Assembly: GCA_002269645.1 (NCBI GenBank)
Contig: NIVC01001603.1
Span: 134,217-198,216, forward strand
Length of the DNA: 64,000 nt
Direction of reading: 5' to 3'
Source of the DNA: Macrostomum lignano
Taxonomy: Eukaryota
The notes beneath the pieces were generated by a model. The model had not been told where the DNA came from. It was given only the letters and a program-made list of their open reading frames with translations, and did no database searches. Below are positions 1-24,413 of this stretch, in pieces. The stretch's first letter is position 1; the number at the start of each line of letters is the position of its first letter. The position numbers were made by a program, and so were the translations under genes.

Positions 1-122
1 CTAGCCCTAGGCCTACTTAATACTTAATACTCACATAGGTAAATGAGTTAAATCAGTGCATGTTTTATGATACAAGCTGGTAGTGGTAGGCCTACAGCTA
101 ATAGAAGTTAATCCAACTGACA

Positions 123-410
123 CATACATGCGCAACCTCCAAAATTTGGTCGGCCATGCAACTTAGTTTTAACAAAAATACAATGTAGTTTTTGGCCAAA
201 AATGCAAAAAAACCTAAAGCAAAATTAACTTTGGGTAAACGACAAGAGTAACTATGTCTTATTAAGCCAAAAGGCCTCGTCAGCTACTTAGTACTACTAC
301 TTGGGTGTTTTTTCGAGTGGGCATGTTTTATGATGTATGCAACTTCCTTGGTTGGCTGCCAAAATCGGTCAGCCATATTGGTTGACTCAGCCGACTATTG
401 CGCATGTATG
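123..410. mobile_element. hAT-like MITE
   Basis: Perfect 13-bp TIRs (CATACATGCGCAA 123-135 / TTGCGCATGTATG 398-410) flanked by an 8-bp TSD-like pair AACTGACA / AATTGACA (one C>T difference). Confidence 0.7.
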
Positions 411-922
411 AATTGACAGATTTTCAAAATTATATGGAATATATGGAATGGGCCAGCGTAATTTTAGGCATTGCCAATTTTGGCTTGAGTAAAGTACTTA
501 CTTGATCACAGCACAAGACTGACTATTCTGAGCTATAGGACTTCTTCTCTGCTTTACCAGGAGCAGAGCTGAGCTGTGCATCAAGAGTAGAAGCACACAG
601 TGCCGCCTCAAGGCGCTTCTTCTCTCAGAAATGGCACATTCGCTCCTTCGCCTGGTTGTGCTGCTTGCAAATTTGCTAGGTATCAGCAATCTCTTGGCAA
701 GCCTGGCTTCTTTACTTCTCAGCCTCTCGATAGGCGTCGCCTCTCCTCTGTTGAAAGGCCTGCTGCAGTTCACCAAGCGTCTTCTTCACCATCCTTATAG
801 TCATCTAGAGCCTATCAGGGACTTGGCTAGAGTAGCAGAAATGCTGAAATTAAGAAATCCATACACATTAAAGCAAAAAGGGGTGCAAATATGCCAAGAA
901 ATGTCTATGTTACGACTAGAAA

Positions 923-962
923 GGGCATGTTACGACCAGAAGCTTCTGGTCGTAACATGCCC
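923..962. repeat. Perfect 40-bp palindrome
   Basis: GGGCATGTTACGACCAGAAG|CTTCTGGTCGTAACATGCCC; a partial extra arm copy lies at ~907-920. Confidence 0.95.
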
Positions 963-1899
963 CATCTTATACACATGGTTTAAACAACTGGAAAAACCTT
1001 TTTGAATCATAATAACTAGCCTGGTTATGTTTATTTGGTAGGTTTCTAGCACTCTGTGAAGCTCCTAGAGTCCTAGTGTCTGCTACAAAATGAAGCACTT
1101 TAATCATTATGGTTGTAACATAGATTTTTCCAAACAAAATTAAGTACCTAGGCGCACTTGTACTAACATAGTTGTAAATATTTTCTTTGAAAAAAAAAAA
1201 CTTTTATAAGTAAACAATTTTGGGCCTAAAAAGTCACTTGGCAATACAAATTATCATGTTTCAAAAAAGACCATAAAAATGAAGTATATGGTTCTTTTTT
1301 TGAAATAAAAAACTTCAAAAACAAAAAAACTTATGCCCAACTAGTATAGGACATAAATGGAGTCTAGAAGTTCATTTCTATATATGTTTACTTGAAAAAA
1401 ATACTTGTACCAGTTGAAATACAAAAAAAATTTGTCAAATTTGTCCAAGTTATGTAGAATGAGCCATTTATAAGTATGTTTTATATTTTATAGCTTTATA
1501 GGTTAAAATAGAACTAGTACACAATTAGTATCTAGGTAGCATATAATTAGATTTTTCCCTAAAATATTTTTTAACATATTATTCTCCTTTTCTATCTCTT
1601 TGATTTTATTGTTCATTGTTTAATGTTTATTGAAATTTTATTGAAGTCTCTAGTTTTACTACAAGAACTAGTACCAAGAAAAGAAAATCTCCTTTAATAT
1701 ATAGGCTATTAAAACCTGTAGATTTTGAAATTATAGAATTATATAATCCCTAGTCCTAGAACTATTTTTGCATATATTATTAAATTTGAAGTCATGCTCA
1801 AATAAAAAACTTGTTAATAGTTAAGATTGTGGCAAACAAAAATTATAATAAATGTACAATTAATTACAATTTGATGCCTTTGAAACTTATCTTAGTTCC

Positions 1900-2334
1900 C
1901 TGTATTTTTCAGCTGTTTCTTCTTCTCTTCTTTTTCTTCTCTTATCTTTCCTCTTCCTGCTTTATTCTTTCTTTACATCTTCTCTCCTTACTATTTTCCC
2001 TACTATTCTTTCCTCTTAACCCTTTGCTCTTATCTTTCTTTTCTTCTCTCTTCTTTTTATTCTATTATATATCTCTCCTCTTTCCATTCCTCTCTCTGTT
2101 TTCCCTCTTCTTTCCCTTCTTCTTTTCTTCCTCTTTTTTTTCTCCTCTCTCCTCTTACCTCTCTTCTCTAGTCTATCTAGTCTAGTCTAATCTATTATTT
2201 CTCCTCTCTTCTCTCTTACAATTTTCACTTTTCTTTTATCTTTTTTCTTCCCCTCTTCTCTTAGCTTTTTTTCATTTTACTTCCCTCTTCTCTCCTTTTA
2301 TCATCTATGTTTTTTCTCTGATCCCTTTCCTCAC
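1900..2334. repeat. Decayed CT-rich low-complexity tract or degenerate minisatellite (intron 1 of the pseudogene)
   Basis: Almost purely pyrimidine on the + strand; begins right after the minus-strand donor at 2334. Confidence 0.7.
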
Positions 2335-3021
2335 CCTGTCTCTCTTTTCTGATTGTCTATTCCTTCTCCTTTCTACTCTCATCTAGCCTACAGCCATGAG
2401 CTAGATTCTTTGTCTGGCCCTTGAGTTATGTCTGCTGTCCCCTGTTTCAAAAGCCAGTTTGTGAGTCATAATATTCTCATGGTTGTTTTGTTCTATTATC
2501 CATTTGCTGACTGCTTTGATCACATTATCTTTCTAACCAATTTGCAGCCCTATAAGGAATTTCTATATCTCTAGCAACTTTTAACAATCAAGCAACTTAA
2601 TACATTTCTTTGGAGGCATTAAAATTCCAAAGTGCATTTAAGTTTAACTTTCATGGTATAACTAATTTAGTAGAAATATTTTACTAGGCTTTTTCATAAA
2701 TTTTCACTTTTACAAACAAAATATATTGCATTGCCTTGATTTGCCCTCTTCCTTATTTACAGTTGAACTGCAAAATTGCTTATATAGAGGACAATGATAA
2801 GAATTTCTCTCTTAAATTCCATGGCTAAAAGTAGTCTCTCTATATATAGGATGCAAAAAGGCAATAATTTTTTTCCAAAACATTTTACATTGATTGCTAT
2901 ATACACTAAGCCTTATCATTTGACCCCTTTCTCTGGGAGTTAAGTGAGTGAAAGTGGTCAAACATTAAAAAGTAGATAAACTTCAAATAATTACAATATC
3001 CATTACAATTAATGGCAAACA

Positions 3022-3320
3022 GGGTTGTAGCCTAGTAGTCAAGGCATTAGACTTACAACTTAAAGGTTGGGGTTCAATTCTTGACTCACTTAGATCAATT
3101 TGTGTCCTTTAACAAGACACTTAACTCTGCATTGCTTTAGTTCACCTAGCTGTAAAATGGGTACCAGCATTAGCTGATGTAATTAAAGGTGTGTGGCAAC
3201 CCCCCAGTCTTTTGGACTGAACAGCCATATGTAGCCTTCAGGTACACCACACAATAGCTTTGGCTAAGCTGTCATTTGGACATCTGCCTATTAGGACAGG
3301 TGTAATCAATTGTATTATTA
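3022..3320 (+). mobile_element. tRNA-derived CORE-like SINE, heavily C>T/G>A mutated copy
   Basis: Colinear with copies at 5429, 18310, 44086 and 51238. Has degraded A/B boxes and the core CAAGACACTTAACTC...CTGTAAAATGGG. Confidence 0.85.
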
Positions 3321-4362
3321 TATTCATACATGCCTAACACCCATCCAACCTATCCAAACCAGATAGGTGAAATGGCTGCTGGCCAAGGTAAGTTGCATAA
3401 TACTACAAGAAGAAAAAAAGGAAAAGAAAAGAGAGAAAGAAGAAAGAGGAGAGAGAAAGAGAAAAAGTCATATACAAAAGTGAAAATTAGGTCGCAATCA
3501 GGGAAATTAAGTTGCAATCAGAAGGAACTAAATCACAATTGGGAGGAACTATGTCACAAATCTGAACAAAGCTAATAAGTTGCACTAGACAGGTAAACTT
3601 TTGAGGTTGTGCATATATGATTATATTATAATTATTACAATTAAGTTATTTATTTGTAACTTTTAATTGAAATAGAATAAGTCAATAAAGAATTGTGTCT
3701 AATTTAAAGTCAATTGCTTTATGTAGGGCAAACTTATGGCAATCTCGTAGTCAACTTTGAAACCTATTTTGCCACATCATGCCAAATAAAAAAGAGAAAG
3801 GCAGAGGTTGGGGTGATTAATATGCTGACAATAAGCCAAATAACTTTGAAAGTATATTTTGCCATTTATAATTAATTTTGAGGTCAAAATTTTACACAAT
3901 TGTTTTAAATTAGTTGAAGTTGTTTGTGTCAAATTTGAAAACAATAAGTAAATGTTAAAGCAATGCTATGGAGGATTTAGTAACAAATTGCACTTTTTAG
4001 CAGTTTTTGTACTTTTAGGTAAAAAGACTTCAATTTAGAAAATTTTATAAAGTAGCGCTTTTGCCCTAGTGAATTTCAGGTGGGTACAAAATTTGGTGTC
4101 ATTAGTTAAGTGGTTGTGGAGTCCATAGCAAACAAAATTATACACACATGTACATAGAGTTTTCATTTTTTTATAAATTCCTGAGATTGCTAGAAAAGCC
4201 AGCATCTCCATCTTTATCAGAGTGCGGCGCTAGACCACTGGGCCCCCTTTAATAACTGAGCTAATCTGTCCCCAACTTGTAGTTACCTATTGTATTTGTG
4301 CATAGAATCTTTTAAAATTCCTTCATTTGTTATTGCCCTTGAACAATTTCAGTGACAACAAA

Positions 4363-7300
4363 ATGGCTCTATTAAAGAACATCAGAATATTTGAAAAAGC
4401 TAGCACAGATCCCACTCTGCATAGCCTCATAATGCAGCACAAAAGCCGATCTGAGTCTGTCCTGTTTCAAAACAATCTAATCGCCACGCTGAGCGAAGTC
4501 GAGACGCAGAATTTATTGAAAGACTACACCAGAGTGCTGGATGCGTACGCATGTTTAGGCGTTCTAGCTGTCAACACGCCGAAAAATGAAACTGTCAATT
4601 TTCTCATATTGGTCACGGCATGCGTTTCTGTTGGTAAACTGCCAGACTTTGAGGTGCACAAAATCACTCGAGTAAGCTGTGTTAGTTTGCGAAATTGTCC
4701 TACAGACGCCCAGCTGGTGTCTGAGATACAGAAACTGTTGATGTCGGAGATTTTCTACTTTGCCAGAACCTCGGATGATAAGCCGTATGATTTGACTGTA
4801 AGCCGGTGGTATTGCTCTTGGCTCTGATTTTTATTAGATTAGTGTTATTTTGTAGTATGCTGTTATTTCACCCATCATTGGATAGATCATTATCCTTCGT
4901 TATTTACTAGATTAGCAATCCATTCCATTCTAATTTAATCCATATATTATTTACTAGATTAGCAATCCATTCCATTCTAATTTAATCCAACATAATTGAC
5001 TAAATTAGCAATCCATTCCATTCTAATTTAATCCAACATAATTGACTAGATTAGCAATTCATTCCATTCTAATTTAATCCAACATAATTGACTAGATTAG
5101 CAATCCATTCCATTTTAATTAAATCATACCTAATTGACTAGATTAGCAATCCATTCCATTCTAATTTAATCCATACATTATTGACTATATAATCGATCCT
5201 AGTTATTCATATTTCCTATACGAGTACTAATATCTAACCACCCAGGTATCCGTGCAAAACGCTCATTCGGGCAAGTCACGTGACAATCGGTTCTTCTGGA
5301 ATCGCGGCTTGCACCGCCTATTCGGTCAGTTTGGTGTCCCAGCCAACGATTGGCTTGTGTACGCCATCTGCGGCGGGGTGGAAGTGAAGACCATCTACTG
5401 CGGTGAGAAACAGGTGAGGCTAGTTTCCAGTTGTAGCCTATTGATAAGAGCGTCGGACTCATGACTTGAAAGTCGGGGGTTCGATTCCCGATCGTCTCAC
5501 TAGAACAATTTATATCCTGGAGCAAGACACTTAACTCTTCATTGCTTCAGTTCTCCCAGCTGTAAAATGGGTGCCAGCATTAGCTGGGGTAATTGAGGGT
5601 CTGTGTGTGGCGACCCCCCAGTCCTTGGACTGAACAGCAATAGCTGCGGCTGAGCTGTCGGTTACACATCTGCCTGTAAGGGCAGGTGTAATAAACTACA
5701 ATATTATTAATATTATTATTATTAATTGAATAGTTCTTTCCATCGACGATATAAATTTCTGAGAATACGAAATGAATCACACTCTGTCTAGCATGTTATT
5801 TATAGCACCATTTTTAAAGGTATTAATAATGAGTTCTGTGCTCAAATATGCTTTTATCGTAATTATCTGTTGTAAAAATAAATCTAGTTGATATAAATAG
5901 TTTTCCAGCAAATTAGGTGACGATGTTATTTTGTACTTTTTGCTGAATAAAATTCCTCATTTATACATTCATGCTAATCAAGGCCATTCACGGTAAAAAT
6001 TATTGAATGTTTTTGGCTTGCACTGTTTGACTGCATAATTTCTATTACTTATGTCTTAACTTATCTTCATCAAGTGTCTTTAAATGTTTTATTTGTGTTT
6101 TCTCGATGGCTCTAAGAGTGAAGTTTATCTTAAGATCATCATCTTAAGATTATCCCAGATCCCCATGTTAAAATCATCCTAGATCCTCGTGTTAAGTTAA
6201 TGCCAGATCCTCATGTTAAGATAATCCCAGATTTTCATTTTAAGATTATCCCAGATCATTTTAGGATCCTCAGTTTCAAGCTTTAAAAAATAATTACAGG
6301 TCTTGAATGTTGAATAATTGTCAGCGGGGCTTAACGTCTGAAGTACTCCTAAGCCCTTGCATGTACATATGGTATTTAAACCCGTGCGTAAATTTTTTTA
6401 TTTATTGTTAATCAGTTGCGCAACATTTCTCAATTACATTATAAGAAAGTAGCTTCATATACTTATTTTTCTACTATTCAGTAGGCAGTTTTGTGTATGT
6501 AATTAATATTTGTTAGTGCAATGTTTAAATTTGATGCATTTCGAATCATTTCAATCTGATAATAAAAATTCCTAATAACTATCCCTAATCCCAGGCTAAA
6601 GCTTGCGTCATATCCCGCTTATCTGCCGAGCGAGCCGGCACTCGTTTCAACGTTCGTGGCGCCAACGACGATGGTAAAGTGGCGAATTTCTGCGAAACCG
6701 AACAGATCATCTATCTAGACGATGCCGTCACGTCTTTCCTGCAGACTCGCGGCTCAGTGCCGCTGTTCTGGGAGCAGCCGGGCCTGCAGATTGGCAGTCA
6801 TCGGATTAAAATGTCTCGCGGATTTGAGGCCAGCAGTCACGCGTTTGTGCGCCATTTGAAGATGATGAAATCTCTGTACGGCAGTGTGGCTATTGTTAAT
6901 CTACTGGGCTGCAAGGAGGGAGAGCAGGTGATTGGGCGGTTACTGATTACTGTGGACTATATATGCCCCCTTTTGTATAGTTTTTTATATATTTTCTATG
7001 ATAGGTGCGATTTCTGTGTAATCATCTCCATAAAGGGTGAGATTTTCTTTACCTCTTATCTCCATATCAGAAAGGGTGAGATTTCCTTCACCTCTTATCT
7101 CTATATCGTAAAGGGTGGGATTTCCTTCACCTCTTATCTCCATATCATAAAGGGTGAGATTTCCTTCACCTCTTATCTCCATATCATAAAGGGTGAGATT
7201 TCCTTCACCTCTTATCTCTATATCGTAAAGGGTGGGATTTCCTTCACCTCTTATCTCCATATCATAAAGGGTGAGATTTCCTTCACCTCTTATCTCCATA

Positions 7301-10300
7301 TCATAAAGGGTGAGATTTCCTTCACCTCTTATCTCCATATCATAAAGGGTGAGATTTCCTTCACCTCTTATCTCTATATCGTAAAGGGTGGGATTTCCTT
7401 CACCTCTTATCTCCATATCATAAAGGGTGAGATTTCCTTCACCTCTTATCTCTATATCGTAAAGGGTGAGATTTCCTTCACCTCTTATCTCCATATCATA
7501 AAGGGTGAGATTTCCTTCACCTCTTATCTCCATATCATAAAGGGTGAGATTTCCTTCACCTCTTATCTCCATATCATAAAGGGTGAGATTTCCTTCACCT
7601 CTTATCTCCATATCATAAAGGGTGAGATTTCCTTCACCTCTTATCTCCATATCATAAAGGGTGAGATTTCCTTCACCTCATCTCCATATCATTAAGGGTG
7701 AGATTTCCTTCACCTCTTATCTTCATAAAGGGTGAGATTGTCTCGGTCTCGAATCTCTGTAAGGGATGAGATTGCCATAATCTGTTATCTTCCCAAGGCG
7801 TGAGATTTTCATAATCTGTAGTCTTACCATGGGGTGAGATTTCCATAGGCTGTCATCTTCCCAAAAGGTGAGATTTCCTAAATATGTCATCTTCCAAAGG
7901 GGTCAGATTTCCATAATCTTGAATCTTCCAAAGGGGTGAGATTTCTATATCTGTCATCTTCAAAAGGGGTGAGATTTTCCTAATATACCAATTTGGCAAT
8001 GCCGCAGGTTCTATCAAAATCCTACCGAGATCACCACCGAGACAGAAGCCGCCTGTGCTCAGACGTGCCCTATGTAGAATTCGACTATCACACGGAGTGC
8101 CCGGGCGGTAACCCGGCTCGTCTGCCGGATTTGTTGCAAAAAATTCGCGACTACATCGGCAGGTGCGGCTATTTTGTCGCTTTTTCGTCGTCGAGAGCGA
8201 GCCCGGAAAATGATCAGCTGAGGCGTCAGCATTCCTCACAGACTGGCGTTGTTAGGACTAACTGCGTTGACTGTTTGGATAGGACTAACGCTGTGCAGAC
8301 TGTCTTCGGTATTGAGGTCAGGATTGTCTTGTAGTATCAGGGACTAGAGGGATTTCCTGGATTATTTTCAATCTTAACTGATTACTGAGTTTAGCAATTT
8401 CTTTTATTCGTGTAAATTATCCCCAGGTTATGGGATTAAGGATTTGTAGGATTAATACTATCACAGTTGATTTGTATGGGGATTTGTAGGATTAATATTA
8501 TCCCAATTGATTTGTATGGGGATTTGTAGGATTAATATTATCCCAATTGATTTGTATGGGGATTTGTAGGATTAATATTATCCCAATTGATTTGTATGGG
8601 GATTTAAAGGATTAATATTATCCCAATTGATTTTTATGGGGATTTTTAGAGTTAATAATATTCCAATTGATTTGTATGGGGATTTGTAGGATTAATATTA
8701 TCCCAATTGATTTTTATGGGGATTTATAGCATTAATATTATCCCAATTGATTTTTATAGGGATTTTTAGGGTTAATATTATCCCAATTGATTTGTATGGG
8801 GATTTGTAGGGTTAATATTATCCCAATTGATTTGTATGGGGATTTGTAGGATTAATATTATCCCAATTGATTTGTATGGGGATTTGTAGGGTTAATATTA
8901 TCCCAATTGATTTGTATGGGGATTTGTAGGATTAATACTATCCCAATTGATTTTTATGGGGATTTGTAGGATTATTATTATCCCAATTGATTTGTATGGG
9001 GATTTGTAGGATTATTATTATCCCAATTTATTTGTATGGGGATTTGTAGGATTATTATTATCCCAATTGATTTGTATGGGGATTTGTGGGATTATTATTA
9101 TCCCAATTGATTTGTATGGGGATTTGTAGGATTAATATTATGCCAATTGATTTGTATGGGGATTTATAGGATTAATATTATCCCAATTGATTTGTATGGG
9201 GATTTGTAGGATTAATATTATCCCAATTGATTTGTATGGGGATTTAAAGGATTAATATTATCCCAATTGATTTTTATGGGGATTTTTAGGGTTAATATTA
9301 TCCCAATTGATTTGTATGGGGATTTGTTGGATTATAATATTGTCCCAATTGATTTGTATGGGGATTTGTTGGATTATAATATTGTCCCAATTGATTTGTA
9401 TGGGGCTTTGTAGGATTATAATATTATCCCAATTGATTTGTATGGAGATTTGTAGGATTAATATTATCCCTATTGATTTGTATGGGGATTTCTGGGATTA
9501 ATATTATCCCAATTGATTTTATGGGGATTTGTGGGATTAATATTATCCCAATTTATTTGTATGAGGATTTTGTAGGATTAATATTATCCCAATTGATTTG
9601 TATGGGGATTTATAGGATTATTATCCGAATCGATTATGGTGTGTATTGTAAGGATTTTTATCCCCATTGATTATGTTGTGTATTTTAAGGATTAATTATC
9701 CCAGTTAATTATGGCGGGGATTTGTAAGATCCTCTCGCCTTTCTATTTATCTTCTATTATTCTCTCTATTCGCCTCTCTATTCCCACCCAACGCAGCTGA
9801 TGCTGCACAACCAGCTGGAGTCGCTAGGCCTGTCATCCGAGCAATTAGCCAAACGATTCAGCGACGCTTTCCGCGAGATGTGGCTGCAGAACGGCGACTC
9901 AGTCAGCAGGATTTACGCCGGCACCGGGGCCCTTGGCGGTGGCCGTTCAAAGATCAAAGACGCCGCCCGGACTGGTTCCAGAACCATACAGAATAATTTC
10001 CTAGACAGTTCCAAGCAGGAAGCTATGGATTTATTAATTCATAATTCTACTCTGCGAGGAGATCTAGCCTCCCGAGCGAGTGCTTTGCTGCCGAAATCGT
10101 TTCTACATTTACCGCCGCGTCAGCTAAGCTACCTGTTAGCCAGTCACGAAGAGTTCACGGATGTCACTCCGGCTAGGGTGTTTGTTGGCACCTGGAATGT
10201 CAATGGCGGTAAACATTTTCGAAGCCTGGCTCATAGGGACGCGTCGCTGCGCGATTGGCTGGTTAATCTGCCAGAGATTAGCAGGACCAGCGCCCCGAAC

Positions 10301-13300
10301 TGCATTCACTCTGAAGCGGACTTCTCGCAGCCAGTTGATTTCTACGCTATCGGGTTTGAAGAGATGGTGGACCTGAATGCCAGCAATATCGTCAATGCTA
10401 GCAGTACTAACAAGCGGCTGTGGGCTGAGGAACTGCAGAAGACTCTGGGAAATGATGGATCTCAGAGGTTGGTTGCTTTGTGTTGGTGTTGTGCCAACTC
10501 CCCAAGGCCCAGAGAGTGTTTAACATGCTTGATGATTAGAAAGTCAAGGGGCTGATGTACACCTTGTGTGAGCTTATATGTGCTCAGGACAGGATTGACT
10601 CAGCATTAATCCGAAAATCACCCTTGATATTATCAGAAAATTGCCTCTAAAAATATCAGAAAATCTACCCTCAGAATACCAGATAATCTCCCCTGAGAAT
10701 GTTAAGAAGTCGCCCCAGAGAATATCAGAAAATCTCCCCTGAGAATACCAGATAATCTCCCCTGAGAATATCAGGAAGTCGCCCCAGAGAATATCAGAAA
10801 ATCTCCCCTGAGAATAACAGAAAATCTCCACTGAGAATACCAGAAAATCTCCCCTGAGAATACTAGAAAATCTCCCTTAAGAATATCAGAAAATCTCCCC
10901 TGAGAATACCAGAAAATCTCCCCTGAGAATATCAGAAAATCTACCCTGAGAATACCAGAAAATCTTTTCTGAGAATATCAGAGAATCTATTCTTAGAATA
11001 CTAGAAAACCTCCCCTGAAAATACCAGATAATCTCCTCTGAGAATACGAGAAACTCTCCCTTGAGAATATCAGAAAATCTCCCCTGAGAATACCAGAGAA
11101 TCTCCTCTGAGAATACCAGAGAATCTCCTCTGAGAATACCAGAGAATCTCCCCTGAGAATACCAGAGAATCTCCTCTGAGAATACCAGAGAATCTCCTCT
11201 GAGAATACCAGAGAATCTCCTCTGAGAATACTAAAAAATTTCTCCTGAGACTACCAAATAATCCCCCCCTGAGAATACTGGAAAATCCCCCTTAAGAATA
11301 TCAGAAAAGCTCCTCTGTAAATATCAGCAAAGCGTCTCTGAAAATAATCACCCCTGAGTAAATAATGTAAAGCGTTATAGTTTCTGCTCCTGTATATACT
11401 ACTTGAATTCGCTATACCGGTAGTCATTGATATTTTTTTCTTTAAAATACCAACCCATTAATCCAGGTACATCCTGTTAACATCAGTCCAACTAGTCGGC
11501 GTCTGTCTATACGTATTTGTCCGCCACGGCATCTCCCAGTACATTCGCGAGGTTGGCACAGCCAGCGTGAAAACTGGCATGAAAGGCACAGCTGGCAACA
11601 AAGGAGGCGTAGCTATCAGATTTGTCTATCACAACACTTCGCTAGCATTTGTGTGCAGCCATTTCGCAGCTGGCCAGTCCAACTACAAGGAGCGCAACGC
11701 TGATTTTGCGCAAATCTATCAACGGCTAACCTTCCAGATGGGTAGAACCCTGGCCCAGCACGACTATGTGTTCTGGTGCGGCGATTTCAACTATCGGATC
11801 AATCTTGGCAGGGAGCGAGTGCTGCAGTGCATCGCCGAGAACAATTGGGACGAATTGAGAAAGCACGATCAGCTTAATGACCAGCGTAGGCAGGTAATTT
11901 GCATCTGGTTACAGGCTGGACCATAGACAAAATCAATAGTGTGGGCGTTTTGGCCACAGAACTCCTCAGAGATCAATTTGGATCAAAGCTATAAGTCTTC
12001 GCTGAAGTACAGAATAGGGCAGAGAGGACCATACGCTGAAATCAGTAGTCTATGGTGAATATGAACTCTGCTGGGCCTATTAGAAACGCACCAAATATTG
12101 GTCGCACTAAAAAAACAAACAATATGCACTCAAAGCATAGGTGAATGGTTTTGTACCATAGGCATTTTTTATTCCATTTCGGTTTTATGCTATCATTGAC
12201 CTAATTGGGAGGCTAGCAAAGTTAAGCAAAGTTGACGGCGGTTAGTACGCAACTAAATACTCGGCCGTATCTACTTTACGCTGTCGAGCTAGAGCTAACT
12301 CCACCCGTACCCACCCTTTTGCAGGGCTTAGTATTCGCCAACTTCCACGAAGGCCACACAACGTTTGCTCCAACTTATAAATACGATTTGTTTAGCGACG
12401 AGTTCGACAGTAGCGAGAAATGCCGCGTGCCAGCCTACACCGATCGGGTGCTGTGGGCCAGGAATTCGTCAGGGAAGCTGACTGGCCCTGGCAAACTGCT
12501 CATGTACAATAGGGCCGAGTTGAAGATCTCCGACCATAGGCCTGTGGCTTGCCTGTTGGAGATTGAGGTGAGGCAAGAATTCCTTCTTATCTGGTCTGAG
12601 AATTCTCTCTATCCTGTCTGAGAATTCCCTCTATCCTGTCTGAGAATTCCCTCTATCCCGTCAGAGAATTCCCTCTATCCCGTCAGAGAATTCCCTCTAT
12701 CCTGTCAGAGAATTCCCTCTATCCCGTCAGAGAATTCCCTCTATCCTGACTGGGAACTCCCACTATCCTGACTGAGAATTCCCTCTATCCTGACTGAGAA
12801 TTCCCTCTATCCTGTCTGAGAATTCCCTCTATTATGTCAGAGAATTCCCTCTATCCTGTCAGAGAATTCCCTCTATCCTGTCTAAGAAATTCTCTCTATC
12901 CTGTCAGAGAATTCCCTCTATCCTGACTGAGAATTCCCTCTATCCTGTCCGAGAATTCCCACTATCCTGACTGAGAATTCCCTCTCCCATGCCTGAGAAT
13001 TACATCTAGCCTGTCTGAGATATTCCCTCTATCCTGTCTGGGAATTCCCTTTATCCTGTTTGAGAAATTAGCTCTTCCCTATCAGCGAGGGCTATCGTTA
13101 CCAATTATCTCAAAAAAGTATGCAACATCTCAACTCCTACTTGCAGGTGTCCCGCGAGAATCGGGCCCGTCGAAATGCCCTCTACGAGGCGCATCTCAAT
13201 GCAATCGGGCCGCCCGACGGCACAGTGATTGCCCGCGTAACCAACACGGACTATTTCGATGACGCATCTTTGGACTTTCTTATCGAGCTGTTTGGCAATT

Positions 13301-15931
13301 GCGGCAGAATATTGCTGGTTAGATTGAAGGCAGATTCAGCTCTGTTCACTTACGCTGAAGGTGTCTCAGCTTTGCGAGCTGTTCAGGTGAGACCGCTAAT
13401 GGTTGTCTGTTGGTGGCTGTCTTGCTGATTGGCATGTGCCTGTTACTGGCTGTCTTGCTGATTGGCATGTGTCTGTCTTTCTAATATAATTGACATGTGT
13501 CTGTTAGTGGCTGTCTTGCTGATTGGCATGTGTCTGTTAGTGGCTGTCTTGCTGATTGGCATGTGTCTGTTAGTGGTTGCCTTGCTGATTGGCATGTGTC
13601 TGTTAGTGGCTGTCTTGCTGATTGGCATGTGTCTGTTAGTGGCTGTCTTGCTGATTGGCATGTGTCTGTTAGTGGCTGTCTTGCTGATTGGCATGTGTCT
13701 GTTAGTGGTTGCCTTGCTGATTGGCATGTGTCTGTTAGTGGCTGTCTTGCTGATTGGCATGTGTCTGTTAGTGGCTGTCTTGCTGATTGGCATGTGTCTG
13801 TTAGTGGCTGTCTTGCTGATTGGCATGTGTCTGTTAGTGGCTGTCTTGCTGATTGGCATGTGTCTTTAGTGGCTGTCTTGCTGATTGGCATGTGTCTGTT
13901 AGTGGCTGTCTTGCTGATTGGCATGTGCCTGTTACTGGCTGTCTTGCTGATTGACATGTGTCTGTTAGTGGCTGTCTTGCTGATTGGCATGTGTCTGTTA
14001 GTGGCTGTCTTGCTGATTGGCATGTGTCTGTTAGTGGCTGTCTTGCTGATTGGCATGTGTCTGTTAGTGGCTGTCTTGCTGATTGGCATGTGTCTGTTAG
14101 TGGCTGTCTTGCTGATTGGCATGTGTCTGTTAGTGGCTGTCTTGCTGATTGGCATGTGTCTGTTAGTGGCTGTCTTGCTGATTGGCATGTGTCTGTTAGT
14201 GGCTGTCTTGCTGATTGGCATGTGTCTGTTAGTGGCTGTCTTGCTAAAGTGCATCTTAGTAACCGGCTGAAACGTATTCGCAACCTCAATTTCCAGGAAA
14301 TCGCCGGCACCCAACTGGACGACGGTCGGCAGGTTCTGGTGGAGCTGCACCTGCCCGACTGGCGCAAACGGGCCATGGCCGACATCGTCGAAGATCCCGA
14401 CTGCCCCGACGCCGCAGCCGAGGCTGAAAGTGTCGACGACGATTCGCTAACCGGCAGCGCCGTCGCTCATTTCGACGTCGACGGAATTGTCGGCGACGAA
14501 GACGACGAGATTGCCGACGCTGACGATGTCGCCCTGGCCGGCGCGTCGATGTACCTGCCGGTGGCGCACGGGGCGCAGTCGATAAAACAGTCGCACAGCG
14601 CATCTGACCTGCTCAAGCTCCACCCGACATCCGGCGGTCTTGCCGGCCAGCGCCAGGGCTCCAATCTCAATTTGGCCGCTGATCGACGCTCGCCATCGCC
14701 TGCGCCGCCGTTGCCGCCACCGCCTGCTCGGCCGCCGCCGCCAAAATCTCCAGCTAAGTCGGCGCCGGCTCCGCCGCCGTTGCCGCCGCTGCCGAAACGG
14801 CCGCCGCCACCGTCGGTTTCGCCGCAGCCGCCGCAGCAACCGCCGCTGCCACCGCCGCCTGCTTCTCTTCAGCAGCAACAGCAGCCGCAGCCTCCGCCCC
14901 CGCAGGGGTTCCAACGACCACCTCCACCACCCGCTGGTTTTTCTGGCCCGATGCAGCGTCCCGGCGGTCCGCCCGATGGTCGATTCCCCAGGCCGGGGCC
15001 GCCGCAGCCGCACCCGTCAGATCCGCGCATGATGACAGCGCCAAGACCGCCGCCTCAGCATCCGAGACCTCATCCGCCTCCGCATCCGGGTCCTCATCCG
15101 CCTCAGCATCCGGGTCCTCGACCGCCTGGGCCTCAGCAACCAATGGGTCCTCATCCGCCTCAGCATCCGGGTCCTCATCCGCCTCAGCATCCGGGTCCTC
15201 GACCGCTTGGGCCTCAGCAACCAATGGGTCCTCATCCGCCTCAGCATCCGGGTCCTCATCCGCCTCAGCATCCGGGTCCTCATCCGCCTCAGCATCCGGG
15301 TCCTCATCCGCCTCAGCATCCGGGTCCTCGACCGCCTGGGCCTCAGCACCCCATGGGACCTCGTCCTCCGGGTCCTTATCCGCCGCCGTCGCATCCCATG
15401 GGAGGACCACGTCCCGGACCTCCTGGTCCTCATCTGCAGCATCCGATGGGTCCTAGACCGTCGCCCGGTCCGCATCAGCAGCAGACGCCGCCCCAGCCGC
15501 GCCATCCGCCGCCGCCGCCTCCGCCGCGGCCGCAAGGAGCCACCGGAGATCCTGTCGCTTTCGACCCTTGGAGCGGCCAGCAACACCAGCAGCAGCAACT
15601 ATCCACTCCATCTGCTCAGCATCGCCCCAGATCTCCATCGCCGAAACGCAAGCCTCTACCCGAACCCGCCGCCTGGTCTCCTGTCGTACCCGACGCTGAA
15701 CCTGCGCCGCCGGCGCCACCGCCGCGCCAGGCGCCACCGCAGGCGACATTCGGCGGCGAAGATTTCGCCGATTTCTCTTCGGCCTCCACCGCCGCCGCTG
15801 CTGCCGGGTCTCCCGACAAGAACGCCGCCGAACTGGAAGCCGCTTTCGGTCGGGTGTTCCGCGACGACGGCCTGGTCGTTGCGCCCAATCCACGGCCCGT
15901 GACGCCGTCGACCCCTGATGCGAATCCTTAG
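4363..15931 (+). CDS. SYNJ1: Synaptojanin (Sac1 phosphatase + inositol 5-phosphatase + RRM-like region + proline-rich tail), ~1486 aa
   Basis: Exons 4363-4797, 5246-5413, 6595-6927, 8008-8316, 9797-10467, 11467-11893, 12325-12567, 13147-13386, 14297-15931; all GT-AG with consistent phases. Motifs: [39 protein letters not shown] (Sac1 CX5R), [32 protein letters not shown]. Confidence 0.96.
4905..5190. repeat. 46-bp minisatellite, synaptojanin intron 1
   Basis: Unit GACTAGATTAGCAATCCATTCCATTCTAATTTAATCCAACATAATT, ~6 copies. Confidence 0.9.
5429..5730 (+). mobile_element. tRNA-derived CORE-like SINE in synaptojanin intron 2
   Basis: B box GGTTCGATTCCC, core similar to the MIR/CORE consensus, 3' tail CAGGTGTAAT followed by AT-rich repeats. 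Confidence 0.88.
7030..7740. repeat. 39-bp minisatellite, synaptojanin intron 3
   Basis: Unit AAAGGGTGAGATTTCCTTCACCTCTTATCTCCATATCAT, ~18 copies, with a degenerate tail to ~7980. Confidence 0.97.
8440..9640. repeat. 40-bp minisatellite, synaptojanin intron 4
   Basis: Unit GATTTGTATGGGGATTTGTAGGATTAATATTATCCCAATT, ~29 copies. Confidence 0.97.
10610..11340. repeat. 23-bp minisatellite, synaptojanin intron 5
   Basis: Unit CTCC(C/T)CTGAGAATACCAGA(G/A)AAT. Confidence 0.93.
12575..13070. repeat. 22-bp minisatellite, synaptojanin intron 7
   Basis: Unit TGAGAATTCCCTCTATCCTGTC. Confidence 0.95.
13390..14250. repeat. 33-bp minisatellite, synaptojanin intron 8
   Basis: Unit GTGTCTGTTAGTGGCTGTCTTGCTGATTGGCAT, ~25 copies. 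Confidence 0.97.
15050..15350 (+). repeat. Coding 24-bp repeat (GPHPPQHP)n in the synaptojanin tail
   Basis: CCTCAGCATCCGGGTCCTCATCCG units interleaved with [11 protein letters not shown] blocks. Confidence 0.9.
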
Positions 15932-18868: not shown

Positions 18869-21800
18869 ATGTCGGGCGCCGGTGGCGGCGGCGGCGGCAG
18901 CGGCGATCAACTCCTGGACGAACAGCTGGCCGCCTTATTGAACTCTGAAGATGAAGCTACTGCCGCGGCCGCTTTGATGTCGGCCGCCGCTGCCGGTTTT
19001 GGCGGATCGGCAGCCGCCGCCGCCGCCTATTCGACTTCCGGCGTTGTCGGCGGCGCCGGCTACTTGGTTAGGCGAGTCAGCCTGACCGATCTGTTTAATA
19101 ACTGCGTACGGACTGTGCTGCAGCAGGGCCTGGTGTTCACACTGCCAATATTCATTATGTGCATCCTGTTTAAAGTGCTTTGCCATACGGTTGGCGAAGG
19201 ATTCGAAGAGACTGGTATTAGCTTTCTGCCTAGGCAGATTATTCACGTCAGCTCCGGCTGTCTGGGACTTGTTATATTGCATCATCTGTTTCAGGAGTTC
19301 ACTATGCTGGTACTGCTGCAGGTGAGAGTTTTTATTGCTATTTCTCACCATTTCCAGTCAGTCATTTATGTGGTTTTCCCTATCAATTCCGGTCAGTCAT
19401 CATTATTTCTATATCCGGTTAGTCACCATCCACTTCTGGTCGATTGTTATCTCTATTTTCGGTCTATCATAATCTCTGTTTCCGGTCAGTCATTCTCTCT
19501 ATCTCCGGTCAGTCATAATCTCCATTTCCGGTCAGTCATAATCTCCATTTCCGGTCAGTCATAATCTCTATCTCCGGCCAGTCATAATCTCCATTTCCGG
19601 TCAGTCATAATCTCCATTTCCAATCAGTTATAATCTCCATTTCCGGTCAGTCATAATCTCAATTTTCAATCAGTCATTTCCATTTCAGGTCAGTCTTAAT
19701 CTCGATTTCCGGTCAGTCATAATCTCCATTTCCGGTCAGTCATAATCTCTATCTCCGGCCAGTCATAATCTCTATCTCCGGCCAGTCATAATCTACATTT
19801 CCGATCAGTCATAATCTCCATTTCCGGTCAGTCATAATCTCAATTTCCAATCAGTCATTTCTATTTCAGATCAGTCTTAATCTCGATTTCCGGTCAGTCA
19901 TAATCTCCATTTCCGGTCAGTCATAATCTCCATTTCCGGTCAGTCATAATCTCAATTTCCAATCAGTCATTTCTATTTCAGATCAGTCCTCATCTCGATT
20001 TCCGGTCAGTCATAAAACCATAATCTCCATTTCCGGTCAGTCATAATCTCCATTTCCGGTCAGTCATAATCTCGCGGTTTTGTCAATCATTAAGCGTCCT
20101 CTATTTTATCATCTGGTGCATCAGACCATAATTAGCATTTAATTAACCAACGAATATTTGCAGGGCTTATTAGCCTACTTCACCATACTATTGGCTCACA
20201 CGTTTCTATCGAGGCGTTGCGGCCTAGCAACTGCCTTATTGTCGCTAATATTTCATCTGATTTGGTGAGACAATCATCAATTTAACTTTGTCTATGTTAA
20301 ATACTAAATACTAGCAATTATAGTGTTAGATTTTTATTAATAATTACATTTCAGCCAAGTGTATCTGCCGGCTGACAGTTGGCAAAAAATCCGCGGGCCC
20401 CTGATGGTCCTGTCGCTGAAAGTAGTATCTATCGGATTTGATTTAGATCGGCAACTGCTGCTACTGGTGCCTGGGGTGTTCGAATTTTTCGGATATGCGT
20501 TTAACGTTGGCACAGTTGTGTTGTGTTCGGGCCCTGGGTCGCCTTCTTGGACTATATGACTATTATACAGATTAAGGATAGGCCCATGGTGAGCTCTTTT
20601 CTTACTTATCTCGCCGCATATCTCATCTCACCCCATGTATCTTATCTCACCCCATGTATCTTATCTCACCTGATGTCTCTTATCTCACCCCCACGTCTCT
20701 TATCTCGCCGCATGTCTCTTATCTCACCCCATGTCTCTTATCTCACCCTTATGTCTCTTATCTCACCCCCATGTCTCTTATCTCACCCTTATGTCTCTTA
20801 TCTCACCCCCACGTCTCTTATCTCGCCGCATGTCTCTTATCTTACCCCATGTCTCTTATCTCACCGTTATGTCTCTTATCTCACCCTCGTGTCTCCCTCT
20901 CTTATCTCACCCTCGTGTCTCCCTCTCTTATCTCACCCTCGTGTCTCCCTCTCTTATCTCACCCTCGTGTCTCCCTCTCTTATCTCACCCTCTTGTCTCC
21001 CTCTCTTATCTCACCCTCGTGTCTCCCTCTCTTATCTCACCCTCGTGTCTCCCTCTCTTATCTCACCCTCGTGTCTCCCTCTCTTATCTCACCCTCGTGT
21101 CTCCCTCTCTTATCTCACCCTCGTGTCTCCCTCTCTTATCTCACCCTCGTGTCTCCCTCTCTTATCTCACCCTCGTGTCTCCCTCTCTTATCTCACCCTC
21201 TTGTCTCCCTCTCTTATCTCACCCTCGTGTCTCCCTCTCTTATCTCACCCTCGTGTCTCCCTCTCTTATCTCACCCTCGTGTCTCCCTCTCTTATCTCAC
21301 CCTCGTGTCTCCCTCTCTTATCTCACCCTCGTGTCTCCCTCTCTTATCTCACCCTCGTGTCTCCCTCTCTTATCTCACCCTCGTGTCTCCCTCTCTTATC
21401 TCACCCTCTTGTCTCCCTCTCTTATCTCACCCTCGTGTCTCCCTCTCTTATCTCACCCTCGTGTCTCCCTCTCTTATCTCACCCTCGTGTCTCCCTCTCT
21501 TATCTCACCCTCGTGTCTCCCTCTCTTATCTCACCCTCGTGTCTCCCTCTCTTATCTCACCCTCGTGTCTCCCTCTCTTATCTCACCCTCGTGTCTCCCT
21601 CTCTTATCTCACCCTCGTGTCTCCCTCTCTTATCTCACCCTCTTGTCTCCCTCTCTTATCTCACCCTCGTGTCTCCCTCTCTTATCTCACCCTCGTGTCT
21701 CCCTCTCTTATCTCACCCTCGTGTCTCCCTCTCTTATCTCACCCTCGTGTCTCCCTCTCTTATCTCACCCTCGTGTCTCCCTCTCTTATCTCACCCTCGT

Positions 21801-22514
21801 GTCTCCCTCTCTTATCTCACCCTCGTGTCTCCCTCTCTTATCTCACCCTCGTGTCTCCCTCTCTTATCTCATTCTCATGACTCCATCCCTTATCTCACAC
21901 TCGTGTTTATTATCTCATCTATCATAGTACAGTTGATGCGTTTCTCACGGCAAACACATTCGCACTACATTGCAGAATTTCTCCTGGCTACTAACAGCGA
22001 TTCGTGCCTACGTGCTGTCAATTGGTAGCCTATTGTACTCCACCTGTTTCAGCAATTGGATCATCATTGATGGCTCTTATAAGTGAGTATTAGTTATATA
22101 GATTTCTACTAGATGCTAAATTTGGAACTGTTATTGCCTTTCATATCTTTATTTCAAATTTGTTTTATTAAAAAACATTTTTTAGATGGCTAATCGCGTT
22201 TAGAGATGCGCAATCGTTTCGCTTCAGTCACTATTTCACTTGCTACACGTCCGAGGCCACCGCCATAGCATCCGGTATTGGCGCTTCCAGGTATAGGGAG
22301 GCCGGCAACTCCGAGACTAAATGGTAGCGGTTTTGTGCTATTTTTTCCTCTTGCGTTTTATTCTATTGCGTAATCACACGTCATTTGTGTAGGTTTCATT
22401 CTTTCAGTCATCAGCATGCTAGTAGTAGCACTTTACCGATCATGTCAGCAATTTTTACTCCTTGATAAATAAGTAGATATACGGATAGATAGATAGTTAG
22501 AGATGGATAGTTCG

Positions 22515-22574
<60 letters not shown>

Positions 22575-22590
22575 GATGGATAGATAGATA

Positions 22591-22625
<35 letters not shown>

Positions 22626-22705
22626 AGATGATGGATAGATGATAGATAGATGATAAATATATAGTTAGATAGTTAGAGATAGATAGATTGATAGATGATA
22701 GATAA

Positions 22706-22795
<90 letters not shown>

Positions 22796-22846
22796 TGATA
22801 GATAGATAGATTGATGATAGATAAATAGATAGATAGATAGATAGAC

Positions 22847-22910
<64 letters not shown>

Positions 22911-22965
22911 TGATTGATTGATAGATAGATTGATGATAGATAAATAGATAGATAGATAGATAGAC

Positions 22966-23003
<38 letters not shown>

Positions 23004-23057
23004 CCCGTAGATAGATACATAAACTTAGATAAGCAGACACGGACAGACAGACAGACG

Positions 23058-23137
<80 letters not shown>

Positions 23138-24413
23138 CACACACACAGACAGACAGACAGGCAGACATGTGTTTCCCACAAACTTCTCCAAAAATAATCC
23201 AGGGACCTACGAGTGTGCAAGCCACTGAACGTGGAGCTGCCCAGATCCCTAGTTGACGTCGTGACCAATTGGAATTTGCCAATGCACCGCTGGCTGAAGC
23301 AGTACGTATTTAATCAGAGCCTGCACTATGGCAAATTTCCAGCCGTACTGCTCACCTATATCGCCAGCTCATTGCTGCATGTAAGTTAATATGTAATCGT
23401 ATTTTAGCTTATCATTAAATATTGTAAGAGATACAATCAGTCTTGTTTGTTTTGTACTCGTCTTTTTTTAGGGCATGAACTTTCAACTATCAGCGGTTCT
23501 CCTGTCAATAGGAGTTTACAGCTATATTGAATACGGTAAGCTGGGTGTGCGTTTTATTGCTTTGATTCTATAACAGGCTTTTTGCGCCAAACTCAAGTAC
23601 GTACGCTCTCTTTCAAGCGCGTACTCTCGTGCAGCAGAGTCGGCTAACTCCGCCCCGGGAAGCCTGTATCCGGCCCTCGGGTTCTTCAAAACTTCACAAT
23701 AGCAATCCGGCCCGCTCATCTGTGTCTCTTCTCAGCTCTCTCTCTCCCCCTCTCTACACTCTAATCTCTTCTGTCTCCTCCCCTATCCTCTCTTCTCTCC
23801 CCTCTCCTCTCTCGCCTCTTCTCTCCTCTAATCGCCTCTCATCTGGCGTGCAGTCATAAGCTGAATTTTTTTAAGTTTGCCCGACCACTGGTGTACAGTG
23901 TACATGCCTGAGCTCAATGATCAGCTGACACAGGCTGTCTGCAGTTGTCTATGGCCAAGTGCAGTGGAAATTCTCAACTTGATGGTCTAAAGTATCAAGG
24001 ATTAACCATAACTATGTACATGTATCACAGAATGTGACTGCTGTATTTTCCCACCTCATCCAGTGCTTCGGCAGCGTCTAGCCAGCATATTCAATCTGTG
24101 CATCGAGTCCCGGCCCTGCAGCTCTGCTGGAGGCGGCGGCGAAGGCGGCAGCGGCCATGCCTCTAACGGATCTGGCGCCCACCAGTGCATGGAGCACCCG
24201 GGCAGGCAGATCGCTGGCCGCAGATTATCGAACCTGCTGTTCACCTGTCTGGCAATATTTCACCTGTCCTATCTGGGCCTGCTGTTCGACACTAGTCCGA
24301 TATCTGAGCAGGGCTACTCTTATCAGCACACGCTGAGCAAATGGGCAGAATTGGACTATTTGAGTCATCTGGTTGCTGGCGCGTCTTTTGCATTCTATAT
24401 GCTAATTAGGTAG
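18869..24413 (+). CDS. PORCN: Porcupine Wnt O-palmitoleoyltransferase (MBOAT); frameshifted in this sequence by a 5-bp duplication
   Basis: Exons 18869-19321, 20164-20264, 20355-20588, 21976-22082, 22186-22323, 23203-23380, 23472-23535, 24064-24413. Motifs: [39 protein letters not shown], catalytic SSLLH|G, FHLSYLG. Exons total 1625 nt; removing the duplicated TTGTG gives 540 codons. Confidence 0.93.
19380..20075. repeat. 23-bp minisatellite, porcupine intron 1
   Basis: Unit TCATAATCTCCATTTCCGGTCAG. Confidence 0.95.
20600..21900. repeat. 26-bp minisatellite, porcupine intron 3
   Basis: Unit CTCTTATCTCACCCTCGTGTCTCCCT; homogeneous core ~20870-21870. Confidence 0.97.
22480..23165. repeat. Compound (GATA)n/(GATT)n/(GACA)n microsatellite, porcupine intron 5
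   Basis: Seen directly in the sequence. Confidence 0.98.

What the first reader, a model, noticed from the sequence alone, without database searches (positions are those of the whole stretch)
35..2619. Hidden 4-exon gene with 13 stops, no frameshifts and intact splice sites
Not visible in the ORF track. The minus-strand exons join into 263 codons. Every stop can derive from CAA/CAG/CGA/CGG (or TGG) by transition, and Cys/His codons sit where Arg would be expected (e.g. ERMCHF*EKK from ERMRHFREKK). Neutral decay producing 13 nonsense codons would usually also bring indels, so a burst of transitions is inferred. The reconstructed protein looks coiled-coil, but I do not recognise it.
Basis: partly seen in the sequence, partly recalled or inferred. 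Interest (0 to 1): 0.72.

Follow-up and report, generated by a model that had tools for sequence, protein, structure and literature searches.

The report
Decayed ORF relic, not four-exon gene
The proposed hidden four-exon gene is not supported: only one block of about 230-290 bases is a real, dead remnant of a small helical-protein reading frame with a conserved palindromic motif array in front of it, and the rest is ordinary non-coding and low-complexity DNA upstream of a synaptojanin gene.

Summary
The window is animal genomic DNA, and the finding lies in the 5' flank of a synaptojanin-like gene. The four-exon, 263-codon, 13-stop model is not distinguishable from chance. About 3 million canonical GT-AG four-exon models of that size join the ATG at 2619 to the stop at 33-31, and 23.5% of them have 13 or fewer internal stops. 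The model's stop density (4.9%) is close to background (5.8-8.0%). The "coiled-coil" look comes largely from a tract that is 86% purine on the minus strand (1901-2400). That every stop lies one transition from a sense codon is true of all stop codons. One kernel is real. The minus-strand block 562-792 is homologous (43% identity over 74 codons, no gaps, E=2.3e-7 against 1.84 billion proteins) to a single intact 89-aa ORF on a 945-bp public contig. Both loci carry the same array of a ~15-nt motif upstream, which in the window includes a perfect 40-bp palindrome. The window copy has 3 in-frame stops in the aligned block and no indels. Its differences from the relative show CpG-specific decay on both strands, but no transition excess (42 transitions, 63 transversions) and no GC-to-AT bias. 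My reading is ordinary decay of a relic from an uncharacterised family, not a mutational burst.

The parts
562..792 (-). Decayed remnant of a small ORF, given as one broken gene. Its start codon aligns with the start of the intact 89-aa relative P0001. In the 74 aligned codons (783-562) there are 3 in-frame stops, 0 frameshifts and 0 indels. The same frame continues without homology to a GTAAGT donor-like site near 511, which brings the count to 4 stops in 94 codons.
   Evidence: phmmer found one hit in 1.84 billion proteins, E=2.3e-7. BLASTP gave 43% identity over 74 residues with no gaps. tblastx of L001 against the whole window found only this block, 1.5e-13. In the shuffle test the observed score was 145 against a mean of 33, sd 5.6 and maximum 64.
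908..1120 (-). Array of four copies of a ~11-15-nt motif (TGTTACGACCA, followed by nAAG) upstream of the relic ORF. On the coding strand the order is forward, forward, reverse, reverse. The two forward copies start 163 nt apart.
   Evidence: All four matches in the 64-kb window fall here, against 0.66 expected by chance. L001 has the same order and orientation, with a forward-forward spacing of 168 nt, while the sequence between the motifs is not conserved.
923..962 (.). Perfect 40-bp palindrome formed by the second and third motif copies.
   Evidence: The self-match is 100% over 40 nt. It is also inverted repeat I4. The DNA hairpin has a free energy of -23.9 kcal/mol, z = -9.
1901..2400 (.). 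CT-rich low-complexity tract, 86% purine on the minus strand. It translates as Glu/Lys/Arg-rich peptide in all three minus frames and is the source of much of the 'coiled-coil' impression.
   Evidence: Composition and stop counts per frame are 11, 10 and 15 stops in 166 codons. The degenerate short-period repeats are seen. Alignment scores against P0001 are only 51-58, which is within the range of shuffled sequences.
35..509 (.). AT-rich non-coding DNA with small repeats. These are a 13-nt perfect inverted repeat at 123-135 / 398-410, an 18-nt motif at 140-157 and 359-376, and a 14-nt direct repeat at 58-71 / 321-334. There is no coding evidence.
   Evidence: Repeats are shown. Stop density is 8-10 per 158 codons in every minus frame. 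There is no Pfam, PDB or L001 match.
2401..2619 (-). The presumed first exon of the finding's model, starting at the ATG at 2619. There is no coding evidence.
   Evidence: There are 4-6 stops in 72-73 codons in each minus frame. There is no Pfam, PDB or L001 match.

Best explanation
The span 35-2619 is intergenic DNA upstream of a synaptojanin-like gene. It holds no four-exon gene.

It does hold one dead relic of the 5' part of an uncharacterised genetic unit. That part consists of an array of four copies of a ~15-nt motif, two of which form a perfect palindrome. About 115 nt downstream on the minus strand lies the start of a small ORF whose intact relative is predicted to be one long basic alpha-helix. 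The unit is either a mobile element or a member of a small gene family; which of the two is not settled.

The window copy is no longer under coding constraint. Its stop density equals that of shuffled sequence. Where its differences from the relative depart from plain divergence, they do so in the way spontaneous deamination of methylated CpG on both strands predicts, which is the normal slow decay of silent DNA in an animal genome.

Shown: the homology, the shared motif architecture, the break counts, the substitution classes and the chance level of the four-exon model. Inferred: that the motif array is a protein-binding site set, because it is conserved while the sequence between the motifs is not; that the unit is repeated or mobile; and that CpG methylation is the cause of the decay.
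For: Context: Pfam finds Syja_N and Exo_endo_phos2 exons on the + strand from about 6.7 kb on, with a likely first coding exon at 4327-4827 that itself has no Pfam match.

Chance level of the model.

Homology of the block.

Shared motif array at matching spacing.

Loss of constraint: 3 stops in 74 codons, against a mean of 3.5 in shuffles.

CpG-specific decay: 8 of 11 CpG sites of the relative face TG/CA in the window, 5 TG and 3 CA. CpG positions changed at 8/22, other C/G positions at 10/85, p=0.011. CpG observed/expected is 0.53 in the block, 0.0-0.5 in the flanks and 0.8-0.97 in the window's exons.

No transition or GC-to-AT excess.

The relative P0001 is predicted as a single helix over residues 5-72, with mean pLDDT 89.
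Against: Only one relative is known: an 89-aa ORF on a 945-bp contig from an unidentified sample. The ancestral state of the window copy is therefore unknown, and substitution directions are inferred from a partner that is only 53% identical at the DNA level.

The reciprocal CpG comparison (window CpG against the relative) also shows some TG/CA, at 4 of 8 sites. Part of the signal is therefore ordinary two-way CpG turnover.

Three of the four motif copies keep their CpG, and the palindrome is perfect. That fits neutral decay of the whole unit less comfortably, although 1/4 against 8/11 is not a significant difference.

No copy number is known, so 'mobile element' is unproven.

The other putative exons were tested only against Pfam, PDB sequences and L001.
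Confidence: 0.75

Rival explanations
1. The finding as written: a real four-exon gene of 263 codons on the minus strand, inactivated recently by 13 nonsense changes and otherwise intact.
For: The ATG at 2619 and a stop at 33-31 share one frame. One block of the span is truly coding-derived. A strong donor-like site (GTAAGT) near 511 and an acceptor-like site (tttcag) near 851 flank that block.
Against: Three million equivalent models exist, and a quarter of them have as few stops or fewer. Stop density outside the block is at background. Homology to the relative stops at the block. There is no Pfam match in any frame and no PDB match in the minus frame that holds the ATG and the block. A large part of the span is low-complexity polypurine.
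Confidence: 0.03
2. The block was hit by a burst of enzymatic C-to-T / G-to-A hypermutation (RIP-like or deaminase-like editing of a repeat copy), which made stops without indels.
For: There are 3 stops and no indel in 74 codons. 6 of 8 CGN arginine codons of the relative face Cys/His/Gln/Trp/stop-class codons in the window.
Against: Transversions outnumber transitions, 63 to 42. GC-to-AT transitions (18) do not exceed AT-to-GC transitions (24). The excess is confined to CpG and occurs on both strands, with 5 TG and 3 CA outcomes. No second copy exists in the window that could have triggered a repeat-directed process.
Confidence: 0.05
3. Everything, including the block, is chance: the match to P0001 is a compositional artefact of two Lys/Arg/Glu/Gln-rich helical-looking sequences.
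For: The query is short, charged and of low complexity. Only one hit was found, and that hit has no relatives of its own. Polypurine translations also score above the shuffle mean against P0001.
Against: Composition-preserving shuffles reach at most 64 against an observed score of 145, z about 20. The start codons align. Independently of the protein, both loci carry the same motif array in the same order, orientation and spacing upstream.
Confidence: 0.04
4. The block is a live exon. It may be non-coding (5' UTR or lncRNA of a gene transcribed divergently from synaptojanin), it may be read in the +1 frame, which is open for 92 codons, or its stops may be recoded at the RNA level.
For: Donor-like and acceptor-like sites flank it. 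Its GC content is 50% against 28-38% around it. The +1 frame is open in both the window (498-776) and L001 (306-614).
Against: The +1 frames show no detectable similarity: tblastx reports only the frame of P0001. An open +1 frame is expected when codon position 2 is poor in T, as in a polar helix. The 92-aa product has no Pfam match. No expression data are available here.
Confidence: 0.08

Closest known systems
Ordinary pseudogene or mobile-element relic decaying by methyl-CpG deamination in an animal genome
   Same: The reading frame has lost constraint, with stop density at the random level. CpG sites are replaced by TG and CA on both strands. CpG is depleted relative to neighbouring exons. 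The relic lies in an intergenic region.
   Different: The parent family is not in Pfam, the PDB sequences or the 5.8-billion-protein collection, apart from one anonymous ORF. No intact parent copy has been seen in this genome.
Repeat-induced point mutation (fungi) and deaminase hypermutation of retroelements, the kind of 'burst of transitions' the finding implies
   Same: Nonsense codons are present without indels. Arginine codons are replaced by Cys/His-type codons.
   Different: There is no transition excess, no GC-to-AT bias, no single-strand asymmetry and no non-CpG context. This is an animal genome and no duplicate copy lies nearby.
Transposon ends that carry repeated internal binding sites for their own protein (for example the inverted-repeat/direct-repeat type ends of some Tc1-like elements; from my own knowledge, not tested)
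   Same: Two direct copies of a ~15-nt motif lie about 165 nt apart at one end of the unit. They are conserved while the sequence between them is not.
   Different: No transposase domain was found. No second end, terminal inverted repeat or target-site duplication was identified. Here two copies also form a perfect palindrome. Only 945 bp of the relative is available.
Basic single-helix DNA-binding proteins (bZIP-like), paired with palindromic sites
   Same: The relative is predicted as one long helix rich in Arg and Lys. A palindromic motif sits just upstream.
   Different: There is no bZIP or other Pfam match (best E=0.056, far below the cut-off). No leucine heptad was seen. Binding is pure inference.

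Membership tests
Protein-coding gene or recent pseudogene with four exons (the finding's model) | Stop density in the joined exons clearly below that of surrounding non-coding frames | tested here: not met
   The model has 4.9% stops against 5.8-8.0% in background frames. 23.5% of about 3 million GT-AG models have 13 or fewer stops.
Protein-coding gene or recent pseudogene with four exons (the finding's model) | Homology or domain support for each exon | tested here: not met
   Only the block 562-792 has a relative. The other parts have no match in Pfam (six frames), in PDB sequences (one minus frame) or in L001.
Protein-coding gene or recent pseudogene with four exons (the finding's model) | Spliced transcripts joining the exons | not testable with these tools
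   No expression data for the source organism are available.
Hypermutated copy (burst of transitions) | Large excess of transitions over transversions relative to an intact relative | tested here: not met
   There are 42 transitions and 63 transversions in 222 aligned bases. The caveat is that the relative is distant (53% DNA identity).
Hypermutated copy (burst of transitions) | Directional GC-to-AT bias, on one strand or in a non-CpG context | tested here: not met
   There are 18 GC-to-AT and 24 AT-to-GC transitions. The excess is only at CpG, with both TG and CA outcomes.
Relic decaying by methyl-CpG deamination | CpG positions changed by transition more often than other C/G positions, on both strands | tested here: met
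   8/22 against 10/85, p=0.011, with 5 TG and 3 CA outcomes. The reverse comparison is not significant (5/16 against 19/101).
Relic decaying by methyl-CpG deamination | Cytosine methylation present at this locus in the germ line | not testable with these tools
   Only indirect evidence: CpG observed/expected is 0.0-0.54 in 35-2619, against 0.8-0.97 in exons of the window.
Mobile element (any class) | Multiple dispersed copies, defined termini, target-site duplication, and an enzyme for mobility | tested here: inconclusive
   One copy lies in this 64-kb window and one related locus lies elsewhere. No termini and no enzyme domain were found. There are no relatives in the viral or metagenome contigs, and the 7 pattern matches in prokaryotic genome contigs are chance-level and encode no relative. 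The source genome itself could not be searched.

The most novel reading that the evidence does not exclude
The motif array plus the small single-helix basic ORF is the conserved 5' module of a so far undescribed family, either a mobile element or an autoregulated gene cassette, in invertebrate genomes. In this reading the helix protein binds its own upstream palindromic sites. The window holds a dead copy, and the intact copy on contig L001 is a living member.
Probability: 0.15. Interest if true: 0.4.

Novelty: new member of a known kind. Interest (0 to 1): 0.15.

Why it matters
The main value is as a calibration case. A multi-exon 'hidden gene' with a dozen stops can be assembled from almost any AT-rich intergenic stretch, and polypurine tracts mimic coiled-coil proteins. 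Such findings need a stop-density and model-count null before they are believed. The small real kernel shows that an unaided reader can spot CpG-decayed arginine codons. It also flags an unannotated ORF-plus-palindrome module that may be worth a copy-number survey once the source genome is available. It does not bear on any open question about mutation bursts or recoding.

Tried and rejected
- Word-indexed protein search with the as-is translation of the block (stops marked X): no hit.
- The same search with the first synaptojanin exon, to identify the organism and fetch its annotated locus: no hit at 1e-5.
- The same search with P0001: it found only itself.
- Exact-protein look-ups of two window ORFs, to obtain longer contigs: not on record.
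- Pfam on the block, on P0001 and on all six frames of 1-3201: nothing significant.
- PDB sequence search with P0001 and with the whole minus frame: nothing.
- Palindrome pattern in metagenome and viral contigs: none. In prokaryotic genomes there were 7 matches at the expected chance rate, none encoding a relative.
- The search for related loci with P0001 and with the two-sequence alignment: none.
- Literature search for the run accession and for the motif: nothing relevant.
- A first brute-force enumeration of exon models timed out and was replaced by dynamic programming.
- Fold search of the P0001 model was not run, because a single helix matches everything.
- The bacterial promoter/terminator scan is irrelevant to a eukaryotic locus and was ignored.
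- The idea that the +1 frame, open in both loci, is a second gene was rejected. The two products show no similarity, and an open +1 frame is expected from the codon composition.

Full report
CONTEXT. The window is animal genomic DNA with introns, SINE-like repeats and many minisatellites. On the + strand, ORFs at 6679-6960, 9800-10555, 11567-11926 and 12232-12621 match the SacI-homology and inositol 5-phosphatase domains of synaptojanin. The likely first coding exon of that gene is at 4327-4827, although this exon itself has no Pfam match. A CDC50 exon and a Cys-loop receptor exon lie further on. The finding (35-2619) therefore sits in the 5' flank of a synaptojanin-like gene. I could not identify the organism, because the protein search meant for this found nothing.

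CHECK OF THE OBSERVATION. The minus strand has an ATG at 2619-2617 and a stop at 33-31 in the same unspliced frame. The peptide that the finding quotes is a real translation inside 600-660. The finding gives no exon bounds. Instead of guessing them, I counted all canonical GT-AG four-exon models of 263 codons plus stop between these two points, with introns of at least 40 nt and codons that span junctions ignored.
- There are about 3.0 million such models.
- 23.5% have 13 or fewer internal stops, the median is 15-16, and the lowest count is 3.
- The three minus frames of the whole span carry 5.8-8.0% stop codons, and base composition alone predicts 8.2% (about 22 stops in 263 codons). The model's density is 4.9%.

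A 13-stop model is therefore an unremarkable pick from non-coding DNA. The absence of frameshifts follows from being free to place six splice sites. The statement that every stop could arise by one transition from CAA, CAG, CGA or TGG is true of TAA, TAG and TGA in general, so it cannot discriminate.

ANATOMY OF THE SPAN.
- 35-509 is AT-rich (38% GC). It contains small direct and inverted repeats and 8-10 stops per 158 codons in each minus frame.
- 510-850 stands out at 50% GC.
- 851-1900 is 28% GC. It contains a perfect 40-bp palindrome at 923-962.
- 1901-2400 is a degenerate CT-rich tract, 86% purine on the minus strand with no CpG. It reads as Glu/Lys/Arg in all three minus frames and has 10-15 stops per 166 codons. 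This tract accounts for much of the 'coiled-coil' appearance. Its translations score only 51-58 against the one real relative found below, which is within the range of shuffled sequences.
- 2401-2619 has 4-6 stops per 72-73 codons.
- No Pfam family matches any of the six frames of 1-3201, and no PDB sequence matches the minus frame that holds the ATG and the block.

THE REAL KERNEL. I searched with the translation of the GC-rich block as it stands, with stops marked X and nothing replaced.
- The word-indexed search found nothing.
- The exhaustive HMMER scan of 1.84 billion representative proteins returned exactly one protein below E=0.001. This is P0001, 89 aa, E=2.3e-7.
- BLASTP gives 43% identity over 74 residues with no gap.
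- tblastx of its contig against the entire window finds only this block (1.5e-13).
- Only one of the six frames of the block matches. Its score is 145, against 33 +/- 5.6 (maximum 64) for 2000 composition-preserving shuffles.
- The start codon of P0001 aligns with a Met codon at 792-790.

P0001 comes from a single 945-bp contig of a public run (L001). It has no name, no Pfam domain, no PDB relative and no other relative in the 5.8-billion-protein collection. AlphaFold2 predicts one continuous helix over residues 5-72, with mean pLDDT 89.

A SECOND, INDEPENDENT LINE OF HOMOLOGY. Upstream of the ORF, both loci carry the same array of a short motif (TGTTACGACCA, usually followed by nAAG).
- In the window, all four matches in 64 kb fall in 908-1120, against 0.66 expected by chance.
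- On the coding strand the order is forward, forward, reverse, reverse. The second and third copies form the 40-bp perfect palindrome, whose DNA hairpin has a free energy of -23.9 kcal/mol, z = -9.
- L001 has the same order and orientation: three copies within two mismatches, and a degenerate fourth that I read by eye.
- The forward-forward spacing is 168 nt in L001 and 163 nt in the window. The palindrome lies about 100 nt before the start codon in both.
- The sequence between the motifs is not conserved.

Motifs that are conserved in place while the surrounding DNA and the ORF have diverged to 53% DNA identity argue that array and ORF form one unit, and that the motifs are functional sites in living members. 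That they bind a protein, perhaps the helix protein itself, is inference.

STATE OF THE WINDOW COPY. In the 74 aligned codons the window copy has 3 in-frame stops, no frameshift and no indel. From the aligned start codon to the donor-like GTAAGT near 511 there are 4 stops in 94 codons. Shuffles of the block give 3.5 stops per 74 codons on average. The frame is therefore at the random level and is not a lightly damaged gene.

TEST OF THE 'BURST OF TRANSITIONS'. In the 222 aligned bases there are 117 identities, 42 transitions and 63 transversions. Transitions where the relative has G or C and the window has A or T number 18. The reverse number 24 (binomial p=0.44). There is thus neither a transition excess nor a GC-to-AT drive.

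The one clear bias is at CpG.
- Of the 11 CpG dinucleotides in the relative's block, 8 face TG (5) or CA (3) in the window, and only one is still CG.
- CpG positions carry such changes at 8/22, against 10/85 for other C/G positions (p=0.011).
- The reverse comparison is not significant.
- Of the 8 CGN arginine codons of P0001 in the block, 6 face codons of the Cys/His/Gln/Trp/stop class.

It also explains it by the commonest process, deamination of methylated CpG on both strands. CpG observed/expected is 0.53 in the block and 0.0-0.54 across the span, against 0.8-0.97 in the window's exons. This fits a methylated, unconstrained flank. The caveat is that the partner is distant, so directions of change are not polarised by an outgroup.

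WHAT IT MOST LIKELY IS. It is a solitary dead remnant of the 5' module (site array plus first small ORF) of an uncharacterised unit, lying in the intergenic DNA upstream of synaptojanin. Whether the unit is a mobile element or a small gene family cannot be decided here.
- Only two loci are known, and the intact one is on a 945-bp contig.
- No termini, target-site duplication or enzyme domain were seen.
- Searches of viral and metagenome contigs found nothing, and the 7 pattern matches in prokaryotic genome contigs are chance-level and encode no relative.
- The block is flanked by an acceptor-like tttcag near 851 and a strong donor-like GTAAGT near 511. I therefore cannot exclude that it is today an exon of a non-coding transcript. 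That needs expression data.

VERDICT. The thing is a new but ordinary member of a known kind, a CpG-decayed relic. The conserved motif array with its perfect palindrome is the only mildly unusual feature. Interest is low.

Noticed in passing
window 57003-58964 (+): Intact 653-aa ORF with an acidic N-terminal region. It has no Pfam family at E<=0.01, no PDB sequence match and no exact record in the contig index. It is possibly the protein of an unclassified mobile element. None of the TGTTACGACCA motifs lies near it.
   Followed up: partly
window 3021-3321 and about 5501-5707 (+): Two copies (79-94% identical in pieces) of a tRNA-derived SINE-like repeat. The first starts with an Rfam tRNA match (34.9 bits at 3021-3092) that ARAGORN does not call as a tRNA gene.
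   Followed up: partly
window 58-71/321-334, 123-135/398-410, 140-157/359-376: A small repeat structure inside what would be the finding's last exon. It has a 14-nt perfect direct repeat, a 13-nt perfect inverted repeat 262 nt apart, and an 18-nt motif present twice (0.12 expected by chance).
   Followed up: partly
window 498-776 (-) and L001 306-614 (+): The +1 frame relative to the relic ORF is open in both loci (92 and 102 codons), but the products show no similarity. This is probably a by-product of a polar helical ORF having little T at codon position 2.
   Followed up: partly
window 6985-7650, 13443-14385, 20523-22028, 22411-23268, 40407-41156, 48044-49691, 50147-50875, 55308-55826: Long minisatellite arrays that appear as ORFs of 150-500 codons in several frames on both strands. 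They are likely to produce false 'genes' in any ORF-based reading of this window.
   Followed up: no
window 4902-5187 (+): Tandem array with a 46-nt period, 6.2 copies and 91% matches, just after the first synaptojanin coding exon.
   Followed up: no
window 13958-15931 (+): Very GC-rich (64%) open frame of 657 codons. Its second half is a proline-rich tail that continues the synaptojanin gene. Its first part is a minisatellite read-through, so the true exon boundary is unclear.
   Followed up: no
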